Virus record (IMG/VR): IMGVR_UViG_3300028840_005860
Location: 62,001 to 126,000 of that record
Direction: 5' to 3' (one strand)
DNA length: 64,000 nt
Shown here: positions 34,341-61,470 of the stretch, piece after piece
Layout of the letters: every line of letters starts with the position of its first letter
Numbering within the stretch: position 1 is the stretch's first letter
The notes under the pieces: model-generated
Told to the model about the DNA's origin: nothing
Database searches by the model: none
The model's input: only the letters and a program-made list of their open reading frames with translations
Program-made: the position numbers and the translations under genes

Positions 34341-34417
34341 GTCCTCCGTAGCTCAATGGACAGAGCGTCCACCCCTGAGGGGTGGGAGGTTGCAGGTTCG
34401 ACTCCCGCGGGAGGGCG
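34341..34417 (+). tRNA. atypical tRNA: Arg-type body with enlarged anticodon arm (6-bp stem, cc TGA gg loop)
   Basis: Acceptor gtcctcc/ggagggc, D and T arms normal; anticodon arm 2 nt too long and lacks U33. Confidence 0.65.
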
Positions 34418-34887: not shown

Positions 34888-34922
34888 CGATGAGCGAGAA
34901 TCACGAAGAGACTACAAGCAAC

Positions 34923-35002
34923 GGATTTAGGGTCCCGTGTATGTCGGTTCGAATCCGGCCCTCGCCACCACGCGGCGAGGTAGGCGAATTGGAACAGCCG
35001 CG
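34923..35002 (+). tRNA. candidate circularly permuted tRNA-Leu(TAG): 3' half 34923-34970, 5' half 34974-35002
   Basis: 3' half ends cctcgcc-A-CCA; downstream 5' half starts ggcgagg with a Leu-type D arm; the joined halves give a perfect cggga/tcccg anticodon stem. Confidence 0.7.
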
Positions 35003-35040
35003 TAGCAACACCCATCCCTTCAACTCTCTCGCTCACAACT

Positions 35041-37836: not shown

Positions 37837-39003
37837 ATGACGAAGGAGCACATGAACGTAGGCACGATCGGCCACGTCGATCACGGAAAGACCACCCTCA
37901 CGGCGGCGATCACGAAGCTCGCGGCCGCCCTGCATGGCGGGGAGGCCAAGGACTTCGATCAGATCGACAACGCGAAGGAGGAGCGCGAGCGTGGCGTCAC
38001 GATCAACGCGTCTCACGTGGAGTACGAGTCCGCGCGGCGCCACTACGCCCACATCGACTGCCCCGGGCACGCCGACTACATCAAGAACATGATCGTCGGC
38101 GCGTCCCAGATGGAGGGTGCGATCCTGCTGGTGGACGCCTCCCAGGGGCCGCAGAAGCAGACGGTGGAGCACGTCCTCCTGGCGAACCAGGTCGGCGTCT
38201 CGAGCGTCGTGGTCTTCGTGAACAAGGTGGACGTGGCCGATCCCGACCTCCTCGAGCTCGTCGAGGTCGAGGTCGCGGAGCAGCTGGAGCGCTTCGGTTA
38301 CGCACCCGTCTTCGTGCGGGGATCAGCCCTCAAGGCCCTTCAGGCCCTGGAGACTGGGGACGCGGAGTCCGAGGACGTCGCCTGCATCCGCGAGCTCCTC
38401 GACGCCATGGACGCCCACTTCAAAGCTCCCGACCGGGACATGGACTCTCCGTTCCTGCTCCCGATCGAGCACGTCTACACGATCCCAGGCCGGGGCACCG
38501 TCGTGACCGGCCGCGTCGAGCGCGGCCGCGTCAGGGTCGGCGACAGGGTCGAGATCGCCGGTCGCCGGGATGATGGCCGGGAGGTCGTGGTCACCGGCAC
38601 GCAGGCGTTCCACCGGGACATCCCGGAGGCCCACGCGGGCCTGAACGTCGGCCTGCTCCTGCGGGGCGTCGCTCGAGACGAGGTCGAGCGCGGCCAGGTG
38701 ATCGTGGCGCCGGGCTCTATCCGGTCGCACACCTCGGGGAGCGCCGAGATCTTCGTGCTCACGAAGGAGGAGGGCGGACGTCACACGCCGTTCGGCAGCG
38801 GCTACACCCCGCAGCTGTTCTTCGGGGCCTCGGACGTGTCCGCGACCCTGAGGACCGACGAGGACGCGGCCGTCGAGCCCGGCGACAGGGCGACCGTCGC
38901 GTTCACCCTCGACAAGCCGACCGCCTTCGAGCCCGGGATGCGCTTCGCCATCCGCGAGGGCGGGAAGACGGTGGGTGCCGGCGTCGTGCTCGACGCGGGC
39001 TAG
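37837..39003 (+). CDS. tuf: elongation factor Tu (divergent)
   Basis: [18 protein letters not shown]; ERERGVTI; [15 protein letters not shown]; NKVD; GSALKAL; [14 protein letters not shown]; [13 protein letters not shown]. Confidence 0.95.
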
Positions 39004-58634: not shown

Positions 58635-59192
58635 ATGACCGACACGAAACAGACCTCGAGGCTGCCGGGCGACGAGGAGACGGCCACGGAGTCGTCGATC
58701 CAGCCCGATCCGAAGGAGGAGGGGCCGCGGCCCGTCGTCCAGATCAAGGGGAACGACGAGCTCTACCGCCTGCACCGGGAAGGGAGGCTCGGCCAGGGGG
58801 CCCGTCGTCCCGATCCGACCGACCCGACCCGAGGATTCGACGTGAGGCCCAGGGAGTACACCGTCGAGCGCGACGACAACCTTCCCCTGCGGTTCACGGG
58901 TCGCCTGGTCGGCTGGAACGAGGTCGACCCCTCGGTCCCTCGAGGGACGAGGGTGACGATCTTCGTCACCCGCTCCACCCGGATCGTGACCGCGGTGCAC
59001 CAGTGGCAGCGAGGCGAGAAGAGCGAACGCAGCCGCCACGACGCCGGAGTGCACGACAGACCCGACGAGGCCCTGGCGTGGCTCATCCGAGACGGCGGCA
59101 ATCAGCTCGGCCGCAGCTCGCGAGAGGCGTGGGAGATGGCCTGCCAGGTCTGGCCCGCCTTCAAGGGTCACGACGTCGAGGTCATCGACTAG
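58635..59192 (+). CDS. hypothetical protein
   Basis: MTDTKQTS..., SD AGGAG. Confidence 0.7.
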   Translation: MTDTKQTSRLPGDEETATESSIQPDPKEEGPRPVVQIKGNDELYRLHREGRLGQGARRPDPTDPTRGFDVRPREYTVERDDNLPLRFTGRLVGWNEVDPSVPRGTRVTIFVTRSTRIVTAVHQWQRGEKSERSRHDAGVHDRPDEALAWLIRDGGNQLGRSSREAWEMACQVWPAFKGHDVEVID

Positions 59193-59356
59193 CCCGGTGA
59201 CCGTCCGATGGTGCGCCGTCGGTGAGACGCGCCGGCCGGCGCCCGGAGGGTTCTCGGGATCCGACGACGCCCGAGTAGGAGAAGCGGGACAGCCCTCCTG
59301 GCCATGTCCTCCGGTCGGGGTTCGACTCCCCGGCGGCGCGCCGTGAAGATTCCGGC

Positions 59357-59385
59357 TTGACTTCGCGTCGAAACTCGCGTATCCC
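59357..59385 (+). promoter_or_regulatory. sigma70-type promoter upstream of the Arg/Ser tRNA cluster
   Basis: TTGACT-17-TATCCC; shares TTGACTTCGCGTC with 33898. Confidence 0.65.
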
Positions 59386-59560
59386 GTTGGAACGAGGTAC
59401 CAATCATGACTCTCCAGATCATCAACCGTCGAGCGTACTGTCCCGCTGCAGCACCACTCGCTGCCGCCGCGGCCGGTTCATGCTCCGGATCGTGGTCTGG
59501 GGCGGGTACCGAGCCCAGTAGCGGCGCTCTGTCCAGGCAGAGACGCCCCGTCTAGCACAC

Positions 59561-59636
59561 GGGGCACTAGCTCAACGGACAGAGCAGCGGCCTTCTAAGC
59601 CGCCGGTTGCAGGTTCAAGTCCTGCGTGCCCTGCCA
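59561..59636 (+). tRNA. tRNA-Arg(TCT)
   Basis: gcggc-ct tct aa-gccgc; CCA. Confidence 0.92.
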
Positions 59637-59678
59637 CTACTGGGCGGACCCGAAGGGCCTCCGTCCAGGGAGAAATCT

Positions 59679-59765
59679 GGAGCGGTGGCCGAGAGGCCGA
59701 AGGCGTCGTCCTGCTAAGGCGAAGTGCTCGAGAGGGCACCGTGGGTTCGAATCCCACCCGCTCCG
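59679..59765 (+). tRNA. tRNA-Ser(GCT)
   Basis: tcgtc-ct gct aa-ggcga; long variable arm. Confidence 0.9.
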
Positions 59766-59776
59766 CAACGCCACAC

Positions 59777-59861
59777 GGGGTCGCAGCAGCTCCTCGCGGG
59801 GACGCCCCGAAGGAGTTTGGTAGGCGGGACGACCGCCGGGTTCGAATCCCACTGCGCCCCT
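59777..59861 (+). ncRNA. tRNA-like RNA (9-bp acceptor, 3-bp T stem, no D/anticodon cloverleaf)
   Basis: ggggtcgcag/ctgcgcccc; ggg-ttcgaat-ccc; long 13-bp arm and 5-bp arm. Confidence 0.5.
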
Positions 59862-59865
59862 CTTT

Positions 59866-59952
59866 GGAAGGTAGGCGAATGTTGGTTCGTCGCGCTCGCC
59901 TGGAAAGCGAGTGGGCCACACGGTCCCGAGAGTTCGATTCTCTCACCTTCCG
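59866..59952 (+). tRNA. tRNA-Ser(GGA)
   Basis: ctcgc-ct gga aa-gcgag; long variable arm. Confidence 0.88.
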
Positions 59953-59960
59953 CCGGACAT

Positions 59961-60047
59961 GGAAGGCCAAGCAGATCGGCGACTGCATCCGGCTTGAACC
60001 CGGACGAGGCGTGACAGCCCTTGGGAGTTCGACTCTCCCGCCTTCCG
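59961..60047 (+). tRNA. tRNA-Ser(TGA)
   Basis: tccgg-ct tga ac-ccgga; long variable arm; C8. Confidence 0.85.
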
Positions 60048-60114
60048 CTGAGGACCGAAAAGGACCAACGCACCTGTTATTGACAAGCTCTAGCTACCTT
60101 TCTAACCTTTTCTC

Positions 60115-60780
60115 ATGAGGAAAAACCGAGCGCGAGCACGGATTGTGCTCAGCCAGATACCAAAACGAACCCTTCAAAAAATCGTCCGGGAGCACGCCAC
60201 TTTCGTCGGGGTGCTTCGACAACTGGACCTCAGTCCACGGAGCCGAACGACCGTTCAACTTCAAGACGTCCTCGATGAACGAGGGATCGATTACTCACAC
60301 ATCGAAAACCGTTCCCAGTTACGGTGGGAAAAAATCGCAGAGGTCATCGCATGTTCTCACTCTCACACGGAGGTCCTGACCAAACTCGGACTCAAAAACG
60401 CGGGCGGTAACCGAAAACACCTGATGAAGGAGATCGAGAAACGAGGGATCGACACATCTCATTTTCGTCGCAAAGCGTGGAACGAGGGCCGCCCCAGCCA
60501 CAATCGTGTCCCCGCACGAGAGATTTTGGTCCTACTGCCCGAGTCCGCGTACCGCACCCGACGAAGTCAACTACGCAGGGCCTTGCTGGAGATCGGGGTG
60601 GAGGAGGTCTGTCGGGAATGCGGTCAAGGGCCTGAATGGAACGGAAAGCCCCTGCGCTTGGACATCGATCACATCGACGGCAACTGGAGAAACAACAGGA
60701 GGAAAAATCTCAGGTTTCTGTGTCCGAACTGCCACACTCAAACACCCACATACGGAAATCGTGGAGGGTCAAGCCGATAG
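60115..60780 (+). mobile_element. HNH endonuclease with duplicated N-terminal RGID.SH repeat
   Basis: CRECG...WNGKPL.LDIDHIDG...NN...NLRFLCPNCH; the stop lies inside tRNA-Ser(CGA). Confidence 0.9.
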
Positions 60781-60855
60781 CTGGCGACGGCACCGGTTTC
60801 GAAAACCGGCGAGGTGTAACAGCCCTTCTGGGTTCGACCCCCAGGCCCTCCGCCA
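60763..60855 (+). tRNA. tRNA-Ser(CGA)
   Basis: ccggt-tt cga aa-accgg; long variable arm; CCA. Confidence 0.88.
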
Positions 60856-60856
60856 C

Positions 60857-60946
60857 GCGGATGTAGCTCAGCTGGCTAGACTGCAACCTTGAAAACCGGC
60901 ATGGGGCGACTCATCGGGGGTTTGAATCCCTCCTCCTCCGCTACCA
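60857..60946 (+). pseudogene. chimeric tRNA: Gly-type 5' end joined to a Ser(TGA)-type 3' half
   Basis: 5' part identical to the tRNA-Gly(GCC) start; 3' part cttgaaaaccgg...ggggg-tttgaat-ccctc-ctcctcc-g. Confidence 0.6.
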
Positions 60947-60963
60947 CGGAAAGATGACCGACG

Positions 60964-61188
60964 ATGCGAACAACAGATGGCGACTACCTTCTGCCCAACA
61001 TGACCCGAGAACAGGCTCTCCAGATTCGTGCCTGGCGCGAACGAGGAAGCTGGCGACAAGTCGCCACCCGGATCCATAACTCCATGTACCAAGGCGTCCC
61101 TGCCGAACACCAGAGCGCCGGTGAAGACATCTGCCGCCAAGCGGCCAACCTGCTCGGAGAAGACCCGGACCAAAGCCCCTGGAACTGA
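60964..61188 (+). CDS. hypothetical protein
   Basis: ORF track; lower GC; lies between 22-nt direct repeats. Confidence 0.55.
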   Translation: MRTTDGDYLLPNMTREQALQIRAWRERGSWRQVATRIHNSMYQGVPAEHQSAGEDICRQAANLLGEDPDQSPWN

Positions 61189-61194
61189 AAACAC

Positions 61195-61268
61195 GCGGAT
61201 GTAGCTCAGCTGGTCAGAGCGCGACGTTGCCAACGTCGATGTCGGGAGTTCGACTCTCCTCATCCGCT
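61195..61268 (+). tRNA. tRNA-Gly(GCC)
   Basis: cgacg-tt gcc aa-cgtcg. Confidence 0.92.
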
Positions 61269-61470
61269 CCGACGAACCCCAACAAGGAGAACGACACCAT
61301 CGATCATGACATCTTTCGCCCGGGCCTCTTGGAGGGCCTTTTTGGACCCGGACGCGCGCGGCGCCGGGGGCGACGAAAAGACCGCGAAGCCGTGGACCCG
61401 GAGCCTTCGCCGGCGCTCCGGTTCTCCTACCCGGTCGGGCAGCGCCGGGGCGCGGAAGCTGCCCAACCCT

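What the first reader, a model, noticed from the sequence alone, without database searches (positions are those of the whole stretch)
59777..59861. D-armless tRNA-like RNA with 9/3 acceptor/T geometry inside the Ser cluster
It has a canonical T loop (TTCGAAT) on a 3-bp stem stacked on a 9-bp acceptor. The 12-bp total resembles the 9/3 allo-tRNA geometry described by Mukai et al. However, the D and anticodon arms are replaced by one long 13-bp hairpin plus a 5-bp variable-like arm. It could be a SerRS-chargeable non-decoding RNA, a T-loop decoy, or a new tRNA-like ncRNA class.
Basis: partly seen in the sequence, partly recalled or inferred. Interest (0 to 1): 0.6.

Follow-up and report, generated by a model that had tools for sequence, protein, structure and literature searches.

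The report
Orphan anticodon-less tRNA-like phage gene
An 85-base stretch in a giant phage's row of tRNA genes folds like the top half of a tRNA but has no anticodon; it occurs in this phage alone, so it is most likely a reshaped leftover tRNA gene, not a new RNA class.

Summary
Window 59777-59861 (+) lies between tRNA-Ser(GCU) and tRNA-Ser(GGA) in a 230-kb, 65% GC huge-phage genome. It folds into a four-way junction: a 9-bp acceptor-like stem with one bulged U, a 12-bp hairpin ending in an ACG triloop, a 5-bp hairpin, and a 3-bp T stem with a canonical UUCGAAU loop. No fold gives a 7-nt anticodon loop, so it cannot decode. It is clearly derived from a tRNA gene. It fails the tests for canonical tRNA, tRNA-Sec, allo-tRNA, tmRNA and YrlA. 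It is a singleton. Four related phage arrays with the same gene order have Ser(GCU) and Ser(GGA) only 6-13 nt apart. Covariance and pattern searches found no homologue. Every copy recovered is identical, so covariation cannot be tested, and no RNA data exist. This part of the array has been remodelled: it holds an HNH endonuclease gene, a chimeric tRNA relic and swapped Ser genes. The best reading is a lineage-specific, rearranged tRNA-gene derivative. It is probably co-transcribed and processed like a tRNA and probably has no function. A decoy role is not excluded, because the same phages keep other conserved non-decoding tRNA-like RNAs.

The parts
59777..59861 (+). Whole 85-nt tRNA-like element (four-way junction, no anticodon loop)
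   Evidence: Sequence. MFE fold -47.4 kcal/mol, z = -2.67. Ensemble probabilities. Significance controls.
59777..59786 (+). 5' strand of the acceptor-like stem (GGGG, bulged U at 59781, CGCAG)
   Evidence: Pairs with 59852-59860 at probability 0.96-1.00. A helix this good arises in 45 of 5000 shuffles.
59788..59817 (+). Long hairpin: 7 + 5 bp, 2x1 internal loop, ACG triloop. It stands where the D and anticodon arms would be.
   Evidence: the outer helix is essentially certain; the tip has alternative registers. No 7-nt loop with U33 and a purine at 37 can be drawn (checked by eye).
59818..59822 (+). Unpaired linker UGGUA. It resembles the G18-G19 part of a D loop and could dock on the T loop (inference only).
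   Evidence: Unpaired in the MFE and centroid folds. The resemblance is judged from general tRNA knowledge and was not tested.
59823..59837 (+). Short hairpin GGCGG/GACGA/CCGCC, in the position of a variable arm
   Evidence: Pair probability 1.0.
59838..59850 (+). T arm: 3-bp stem GGG/CCC with canonical T loop TTCGAAT
   Evidence: Pair probability 0.93. The 15-mer GGGTTCGAATCCCAC is shared with three tRNAs of this phage.
59851..59861 (+). Unpaired A (59851), 3' strand of the acceptor-like stem (59852-59860), unpaired U (59861) in the discriminator position. No CCA is encoded.
59679..59766 (+). Upstream neighbour, tRNA-Ser(GCU). In relatives it directly abuts tRNA-Ser(GGA).
   Evidence: ARAGORN and Rfam. 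Relatives.
59866..59954 (+). Downstream neighbour, tRNA-Ser(GGA)
   Evidence: ARAGORN and Rfam.

Best explanation
The element is a lineage-specific derivative of a tRNA gene. It was created or acquired while this part of the phage's tRNA array was being remodelled. It keeps the 'top half' of a tRNA (acceptor stem plus T arm). The D and anticodon arms have been replaced by two GC-rich hairpins.

It lies in the same orientation as its neighbours, 10 nt after one tRNA and 4 nt before the next. It is therefore most likely transcribed as part of the polycistronic tRNA precursor. RNase P would cut it out at its 5' end. Its 3' end would be trimmed and possibly given a CCA tail; the phage encodes a protein of the CCA-adding-enzyme (PolyA_pol) family. 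The product would be a stable RNA of about 85-88 nt.

It has no anticodon loop, so it cannot take part in decoding. I judge it most likely a neutral passenger, that is, a non-decoding pseudo-tRNA, not an RNA with a selected function.

Shown: the fold, the tRNA ancestry of the T arm, the lack of an anticodon loop, the absence from relatives, and the remodelling around it. Inferred: transcription, processing, and lack of function.
For: Fold and significance.

tRNA ancestry: the T-loop 11-mer is confined to the tRNA arrays. Among 464 distinct tRNAs of this phage group, the closest acceptor-plus-T shell is the phage's own tRNA-Ala(CGC).

Not a decoder: no ARAGORN call at default settings; no RF00005 match even at E <= 10; the forced cloverleaf is -21 against -47.4 kcal/mol.

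Lineage-specific: the related arrays have the order Arg(UCU)-Ser(GCU)-Ser(GGA)-Ser(UGA)-...-Ser(CGA)-Gly(GCC). They are G001/G016, G013 and metagenome contig L063. In all of them Ser(GCU) and Ser(GGA) are only 6-13 nt apart. A covariance model of the element finds only tRNAs in 17 huge-phage records.

Remodelling within 1 kb in this phage only:
- An HNH endonuclease gene at 60115-60780, in the slot where G001/G016 and L063 carry a structured RNA.
- A chimeric relic at 60857-60940, made of the 5' half of tRNA-Gly(GCC) and the 3' half of the ancestral Ser(CGA).
- A Ser(CGA) whose body matches the Ser(GGA) of L063.

Processing context: a CCA-adding-enzyme family gene is present in the genome.
Against: A simple decay product would be expected to have eroded stems. 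Here the acceptor (9 bp) and both interior hairpins are nearly perfect and very stable. Unlike the chimeric relic nearby, its two acceptor strands match each other.

The same phages keep other conserved, non-decoding tRNA-like RNAs (elements B, C and D). Such RNAs can therefore be under selection in this group.

The similarity to tRNA-Ala(CGC) is within the range of shuffled controls (best shuffle 67, observed 66), so the donor is not identified.

Transcription and processing are inferred only. No RNA data exist.
Confidence: 0.5

Rival explanations
1. It is a functional tRNA mimic. The RNA is processed and CCA-tailed like a tRNA. It acts as a decoy or sponge for something that recognises the acceptor/T-arm 'minihelix' or the T loop. 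Candidates are a host tRNA-targeting defence nuclease, a modification enzyme, an aminoacyl-tRNA synthetase, or EF-Tu (the phage encodes its own). It does this without entering decoding.
For: The fold is unusually stable and its helices are intact. The phage carries translation-related genes: a three-domain EF-Tu and a CCA-adding-enzyme family protein. The same arrays hold conserved non-decoding tRNA-like RNAs: B with 9 compensatory pairs in three phages; C and P with a YrlA-like permuted layout; and D, a cloverleaf whose 'anticodon' hairpin ends in a 3-nt or 5-nt loop. If T-stem numbering is kept canonical, G59777 pairs with C59860 like the G-1:C73 pair of bacterial tRNA-His (read; that this pair marks tRNA-His is established knowledge).
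Against: There is no homologue and no conservation. It is absent from all four relatives at the syntenic site and from every collection searched. It is not a member of the B family (5.8 bits). A useful decoy would be expected to persist in related phages. There is no expression evidence.
Confidence: 0.3
2. It is a decoding tRNA of unusual shape: an allo-tRNA-like 9/3 serine acceptor, a degenerate tRNA-Ser(CGA), or a suppressor.
For: The acceptor branch adds up to 9 + 3 pairs. There is a variable-arm-like hairpin and a U in the discriminator position, as in many allo-tRNAs (PMC5389517). ARAGORN at 80% threshold forces a tRNA-Ser(CGA) model. There is a weak tRNA-Sec model match of 18.5 bits.
Against: There is no 7-nt anticodon loop in any competitive fold. 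The forced cloverleaf is 26 kcal/mol worse, has C at position 33 and has mismatched stems. There is no D stem with tetraloop. The tRNA-Sec score is far below the gathering score of 47, with E = 1.6. All four serine anticodons are already supplied by neighbouring genes.
Confidence: 0.04
3. It is not an RNA gene at all. It is a DNA-level or transcription signal (terminator, recombination site or homing-endonuclease site) or a chance set of GC-rich hairpins next to a stray T-arm fragment.
For: In DNA of 72% GC, hairpins are frequent. The whole-element z-score is modest (-2.67). An HNH endonuclease gene lies 250 nt downstream.
Against: No terminator-like or promoter-like site was found in 59000-61000. 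The T arm is followed at exactly the tRNA distance by a strand that pairs with the 5' end (45 of 5000 shuffles). No part of it is repeated elsewhere in the genome.
Confidence: 0.08

Closest known systems
tRNA pseudogenes and rearranged tRNA relics in phage tRNA arrays (for example the chimera at window 60857-60940)
   Same: It lies in a tRNA array on the tRNA strand, keeps a tRNA T arm and acceptor, is lineage-specific, and sits in a visibly remodelled stretch.
   Different: Its acceptor strands are fully complementary, and the interior is not eroded tRNA sequence but two new, very stable hairpins.
allo-tRNAs with 9/3 acceptor branch (Mukai et al. 2017, PMC5389517)
   Same: Nine acceptor pairs plus three T-stem pairs, a hairpin in the variable-arm position, and U in the discriminator position.
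   Different: It has no tRNA-Sec-like D stem with tetraloop and no anticodon arm or loop. The 12-bp stack is interrupted by a bulged U and an unpaired A. The tRNA-Sec model scores 18.5 bits against a gathering score of 47. Allo-tRNAs decode; this cannot.
tRNA-like processing or mimic elements built on acceptor plus T arm (mascRNA, plant mitochondrial t-elements, acceptor/T-arm minihelices)
   Same: It has an acceptor/T-arm module without a working anticodon arm. By established knowledge, this module is what RNase P and CCA-adding enzymes recognise.
   Different: There is no sequence or model match at this site. The mascRNA model gave only a 17-bit match, and that was to the neighbouring element B, not to this one. 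Processing has not been shown here.
Phage T4 RNAC and RNAD, small stable RNAs of unknown function
   Same: They are non-tRNA small RNAs of a large phage with still unknown function (PMC9697503). That they are encoded beside the T4 tRNA genes is from my own knowledge.
   Different: No sequence relation was tested or is expected. The T4 RNAs are known to be expressed; this element is not.
YrlA (bacterial and phage Y RNA-like, Rfam RF02553)
   Same: It is a tRNA mimic with a T arm, and YrlA-like elements do occur in these phage arrays (elements C and P).
   Different: YrlA has a permuted layout: a closed acceptor-like hairpin between the T arm and the D arm, on a long terminal stem. Here the acceptor is formed by the two ends and there is no D arm. 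RF02553 gives no match at this site.

Membership tests
Canonical tRNA (Rfam RF00005 / ARAGORN) | Cloverleaf scoring at or above the family threshold (29 bits) | tested here: not met
   No RF00005 match at the site at the gathering score or at E <= 10. No ARAGORN call at default settings.
Canonical tRNA (Rfam RF00005 / ARAGORN) | Anticodon arm with a 7-nt loop (U33, purine at 37) | tested here: not met
   Every placement in nt 11-46 fails (checked). The forced ARAGORN model has C at position 33 and mismatches, and evaluates at -21 against -47.4 kcal/mol.
Canonical tRNA (Rfam RF00005 / ARAGORN) | T arm with the consensus T loop, adjacent to the acceptor stem | tested here: met
   GGG/TTCGAAT/CCC followed by the 3' acceptor strand. 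The T stem has only 3 bp.
allo-tRNA (9/3), PMC5389517 | 12-bp acceptor branch split 9/3 | tested here: inconclusive
   There are 9 + 3 pairs, but a bulged U5 and an unpaired A75 lie between the stems.
allo-tRNA (9/3), PMC5389517 | tRNA-Sec-like D stem-loop (long stem, tetraloop) and a long anticodon stem with anticodon loop | tested here: not met
   A single 12-bp hairpin with a triloop takes their place. The feature is defined.
allo-tRNA (9/3), PMC5389517 | Long variable arm and a G73 or U73 discriminator | tested here: met
   A 5-bp hairpin precedes the T arm, and U59861 is unpaired after the acceptor.
allo-tRNA (9/3), PMC5389517 | [quoted passage not shown] | tested here: not met
   RF01852 scores 18.5 bits, E = 1.6, against a gathering score of 47.
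tmRNA | tRNA-Ala-like ends with G3:U70, plus a tag reading frame | tested here: not met
   ARAGORN finds no tmRNA. Position 3 pairs as G:C. At 85 nt there is no room for a tag frame.
YrlA (RF02553) | Permuted tRNA-like module on a long terminal stem | tested here: not met
   No RF02553 match overlaps the element, and the topology differs.
Element B family of this phage group (model R2) | Match to the covariance model built from three orthologues | tested here: not met
   Only the T loop matches: 5.8 bits, E = 8. Pairwise similarity is not above shuffles.
Serine-accepting tRNA (SerRS substrate) | Aminoacylation by SerRS through variable-arm orientation and acceptor determinants | not testable with these tools
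   Needs an in vitro charging assay. The phage has no class II synthetase core (PF00587), so a host enzyme would be required.

The most novel reading that the evidence does not exclude
The element is one member of a wider, so far undescribed repertoire of non-decoding tRNA mimics in the tRNA arrays of EF-Tu-encoding huge phages. The repertoire would also include the conserved elements B and D and the YrlA-like element C. These RNAs would be cut out by RNase P, CCA-tailed and perhaps charged. They would act as decoys that protect the phage's translation supply from host tRNA-targeting defences, or that titrate host factors.
Probability: 0.15. Interest if true: 0.7.

Novelty: new member of a known kind. 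Interest (0 to 1): 0.3.

Why it matters
By itself the element matters little. It is a single-lineage, probably non-functional tRNA derivative, and it warns that a tRNA-shaped fold in a phage tRNA array is not evidence of a new RNA class.

The context is more interesting. Standard tRNA finders miss many elements with T loops in the arrays of these translation-gene-rich huge phages. At least one of them (B) shows clear compensatory changes in its helices, and C/P shows some, which points to selection on structure. If such tRNA mimics are functional, they bear on how large phages manage tRNA supply and evade host defences that target tRNA.

Tried and rejected
Searches for homologues, all negative:
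- Exact 24-mer in IMG/VR.
- Two exact 23-mers in 185,579 species genomes.
- blastn against 50,697 phage records: only the flanking tRNAs matched.
- Single-sequence covariance model R1 against 17 EF-Tu-bearing huge-phage records. The one weak hit is a tRNA-Pro.

Searches for relatives of the array:
- A flanking protein and a large protein gave nothing useful.
- The phage EF-Tu gave 26 loci.
- A conserved 20-mer anchor gave G001/G016 in IMG/VR. In metagenomes it gave L062, L066 (identical to the window), L063 and L064.
- A second anchor gave only G013.

Sequencing runs: there are no RNA holders.

Hypotheses rejected:
- A repeated or mobile hairpin inserted into a tRNA: no repeats in the genome.
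- A paralogue of element B.
- An intrinsic terminator.
- Part of a YrlA-like unit.
- tRNA-Sec, tmRNA or tRNA-His. There is no UCA or GUG anticodon and no tag frame. The His-like G-1:C73 pairing is noted only as a curiosity.

Origin from tRNA-Ala(CGC) or tRNA-Arg(UCU) was considered. The Ala alignment is not above shuffled controls. The Arg resemblance was judged by eye only, and Arg(UCU) was not among the top-scoring tRNAs.

Not used: the large protein searches, structure prediction and complex prediction, because no protein claim depends on them. No alternative genetic code was invoked.

Full report
SETTING. The window is bases 62001-126000 of a 230,069-bp IMG/VR virus record, estimated about 90% complete, with roughly 65% GC. 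ARAGORN finds 36 tRNA genes in the genome and 28 in the window, almost all on the + strand in several arrays. The phage also encodes a full three-domain EF-Tu at window 37837-39003 and a protein of the CCA-adding-enzyme family outside the window. It has no class II aminoacyl-tRNA-synthetase core. It belongs to a loose group of huge phages (190-620 kb) that carry EF-Tu genes 57-69% identical to this one.

THE OBSERVATION. The 85 nt at 59777-59861 lie 10 nt after tRNA-Ser(GCU) (59679-59766) and 4 nt before tRNA-Ser(GGA) (59866-59954), on the same strand. The minimum-free-energy fold is -47.4 kcal/mol, z = -2.67. It is a four-way junction with these parts:
- A terminal helix of 9 bp with a bulged U at nt 5.
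- A hairpin of 7 + 5 bp with a 2x1 internal loop and an ACG triloop.
- An unpaired UGGUA linker.
- A 5-bp hairpin with a GACGA loop.
- A 3-bp stem carrying the canonical T loop UUCGAAU.
- One unpaired A before the 3' strand of the terminal helix, and a final unpaired U.

In the ensemble, the acceptor, T and short arms have pair probabilities of 0.93-1.0.

IS IT MORE THAN CHANCE? Yes.
- The fold energy is in the top 0.4% of 85-nt windows sampled across the genome.
- The interior alone beats 492 of 500 dinucleotide shuffles.
- A terminal helix as good as the observed one forms in only 45 of 5000 shuffles.
- The six copies of the 11-mer GGTTCGAATCC that the motif list shows away from this site all lie on the tRNA strand inside the arrays: five in called tRNAs and one in the tRNA-like element C.

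The T arm is therefore of tRNA origin, and the pairing of the two ends at the tRNA distance from it is not accidental. The DNA is real. Identical copies are present in two JGI metagenome contigs and in Logan contigs of three runs from three studies, one of them a 151-nt contig that covers both junctions.

WHAT IT IS NOT. It is not a decoding tRNA.
- ARAGORN at default settings and Rfam RF00005 give nothing, even at E <= 10.
- At 80% threshold ARAGORN forces a tRNA-Ser(CGA) model with a mismatched acceptor, a 3-bp D stem, C at position 33 and a mismatched anticodon stem. That structure evaluates at -21 kcal/mol against -47.4 for the real fold.
- I tried every placement of a 7-nt loop with U at position 33 within nt 11-46, and none has a supporting stem.
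- The only Rfam signal is tRNA-Sec at 18.5 bits, E = 1.6, gathering score 47.

Allo-tRNAs are defined by a 12-bp acceptor branch split 8/4 or 9/3, together with a tRNA-Sec-like D stem with tetraloop, longer anticodon and acceptor stems, a long variable arm and G73 or U73. They were found as high-scoring hits of the tRNA-Sec model (PMC5389517). This element shares the 9 + 3 count, a hairpin in the variable-arm position and a terminal U. It lacks the D arm, the anticodon arm and the model score. It is therefore not an allo-tRNA. It is also not a tmRNA (no ARAGORN call, G3:C and not G3:U, no room for a tag), not YrlA, and not a terminator.

RELATIVES. The closest genomes were reached in two ways. 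The phage EF-Tu gave 26 loci. A 20-mer conserved at the tRNA-Arg(UCU)/spacer junction gave further arrays. Four independent arrays keep the gene order Arg(UCU)-Ser(GCU)-Ser(GGA)-Ser(UGA)-...-Ser(CGA)-Gly(GCC)-...: G001 and G016 (nearly the same phage), G013, and metagenome contig L063. In all of them Ser(GCU) and Ser(GGA) are 6-13 nt apart. The element is simply not there.

G001/G016 is the most distant. It lacks the conserved upstream element B and aligns to the window over only about 100 nt upstream of the array. The most economical reading is therefore a gain in the lineage of this phage, although this rests on only four relatives and an unrooted comparison.

Direct searches for a homologue also failed:
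- A covariance model built from the element found only ordinary tRNAs in 17 huge-phage records.
- Exact 23-24-mers are absent from IMG/VR and from 185,579 species genomes.
- No part of the element is repeated in its own genome.

Every copy recovered is identical, so there is no material for a covariation test. No RNA-seq run holds the sequence.

A REMODELLED NEIGHBOURHOOD. In this phage only, the kilobase downstream has been rebuilt.
- An HNH endonuclease gene (60115-60780) fills the slot between Ser(UGA) and Ser(CGA), where G001/G016 and L063 carry a structured RNA.
- Directly after Ser(CGA) lies a chimera (60857-60940). Its 5' half copies tRNA-Gly(GCC). Its 3' half is the 3' half of the Ser(CGA) type seen in the relatives. 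RF00005 scores it at only 12.1 bits.
- The present Ser(CGA) has the body that carries a GGA anticodon in L063.

So recombination has been cutting and rejoining tRNA genes here. Among 464 distinct tRNAs of this phage group, the element's 5' end and its T-arm-plus-3' end are closest to the phage's own tRNA-Ala(CGC). That score is matched by the best of 200 shuffles, so the donor remains unidentified.

INTERPRETATION. The best-supported account is a tRNA-gene derivative that arose during this remodelling. It keeps the acceptor/T-arm half and carries a new interior. From its position and orientation it should be co-transcribed with its neighbours. By established knowledge, the acceptor/T-arm stack is the part of a tRNA that RNase P and CCA-adding enzymes read, so it should be excised and possibly CCA-tailed. 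It cannot decode. Because nothing like it is kept in any relative, I rate a neutral passenger as most likely (about 0.5).

The main rival is a functional tRNA mimic or decoy (about 0.3). It draws strength from three points: the helices are intact and very stable; unlike the nearby chimera, the two acceptor strands match; and this phage group clearly maintains other non-decoding tRNA-like RNAs (next section). A decoding tRNA of odd shape (about 0.04) and a non-RNA signal or chance (about 0.08) are poorly supported.

OTHER tRNA-LIKE RNAs SEEN ON THE WAY.
- Element B (about 59228-59340) has an acceptor-like stem, a T arm and a branched arm. It is conserved in L063 and G013, with 9 of 37 pairs changed on both sides. 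The target does not match its model.
- Element C (about 34893-35035) is conserved in G013. Its counterpart P is found in G001 and L063. Both have the permuted layout of YrlA Y-RNA-like molecules: a long terminal stem, T arm, closed acceptor-like hairpin and D arm. Compensatory changes support the fold. The Rfam YrlA scores are below threshold and no higher than those given by junctions between adjacent tRNAs, so membership is not established. No Ro/TROVE protein gene is present.
- Element D (34341-34417) is called tRNA-Ser(UGA) by ARAGORN. It is a 77-nt cloverleaf whose 'anticodon' hairpin closes to a triloop here and to a 5-nt loop in G013.
- A census of T-loop motifs outside ARAGORN calls in about 800 kb of related loci found well over 50 further candidates. 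Some have recurring motifs. I did not analyse these further.

VERDICT. Novelty: a new member of a known kind (pseudo-tRNA or tRNA-like element in a phage tRNA array). Interest 0.3 for the element itself. The conserved neighbours B, C and D deserve a separate look.

Noticed in passing
window 59228-59340 (+); orthologues about L063:7120-7245 (-) and about L033:2170-2300 (-): Element B is a tRNA-like RNA of about 110 nt with an acceptor-like stem, a T arm (CGGGG/CCCCG here, CCAGG/CCTGG in the relatives) and a branched arm in place of the D and anticodon arms. It is conserved in three phages, with 9 of 37 predicted pairs changed on both sides. Model R2 finds it only in this phage, L063 and G013.
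   Followed up: partly
window 59357-59556 (+): A conserved TTGAC promoter-like box is followed by GAGG, an ATG at 59407 and a 49-codon Cys-containing ORF that ends at TAG 59554-59556, just before tRNA-Arg(UCU). The block is conserved at the nucleotide level in L063 and G013. The generic sigma-70 scan did not call this promoter. It may mark the start of the transcription unit that contains the element.
   Followed up: no
window 34893-35035 (+); L059:644-796 (-); L029:1794-1973 (+); L063:6248-6416 (-): These are circularly permuted tRNA-like RNAs with a YrlA-like layout: a long terminal stem, T arm, closed acceptor-like hairpin, D arm and one further hairpin. They are conserved between phages, with compensatory changes. 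The Rfam YrlA score is sub-threshold (19.6-27.3 bits against 69) and no higher than that of junctions between adjacent tRNAs. No TROVE/Ro gene is present in this phage.
   Followed up: partly
window 34341-34417 (+); L059:1285-1375 (-): ARAGORN calls this gene tRNA-Ser(UGA). It is a 77-nt cloverleaf without a long variable arm. Its anticodon hairpin closes to a UGA triloop here and to a 5-nt loop in G013. Flanking bases extend the acceptor helix. It is probably another non-decoding tRNA-like RNA or a pseudogene.
   Followed up: partly
window 60857-60940 (+): This is a chimeric tRNA relic. Its 5' half is identical to the 5' half of tRNA-Gly(GCC) (61195-61270). Its 3' half is the 3' half of the Ser(CGA) type found in the relatives. 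RF00005 scores it at 12.1 bits.
   Followed up: yes
window 60115-60780 (+): An HNH endonuclease gene (PHROG 10822, E = 4e-57) is inserted between tRNA-Ser(UGA) and tRNA-Ser(CGA). A TTGACA box lies upstream of it. In G001/G016 and L063 this slot holds the permuted tRNA-like RNA P.
   Followed up: partly
window 37837-39003 (+): The phage encodes a three-domain EF-Tu (Pfam GTP_EFTU at 5e-56, plus domains 2 and 3), about 55% identical to bacterial EF-Tu. Homologues 57-69% identical occur in at least 17 huge-phage contigs of 190-620 kb.
   Followed up: partly
genome C1:207656-208114 (outside the window), locus L067: A PolyA_pol (CCA-adding enzyme family) domain lies inside a 925-aa open frame. Most of the phage tRNA genes read here do not encode CCA.
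   Followed up: no
loci L003-L027 (related huge phages): Dozens of T-loop motifs lie near tRNA genes but outside ARAGORN calls. Some share recurring upstream motifs, such as GGACTACAT or CCTACAAGC, in L007, L008, L016, L017 and L019. Some appear to be real tRNAs that ARAGORN missed; others are tRNA-like RNAs.
   Followed up: no
window 59961-60048 and 60763-60855 (+): tRNA-Ser(UGA) and tRNA-Ser(CGA) score better with the tRNA-Sec model (43.9 and 36.9 bits, below the gathering score of 47) than with the general tRNA model. By eye they have an ordinary 7/5 acceptor branch with an unusual D arm.
   Followed up: no
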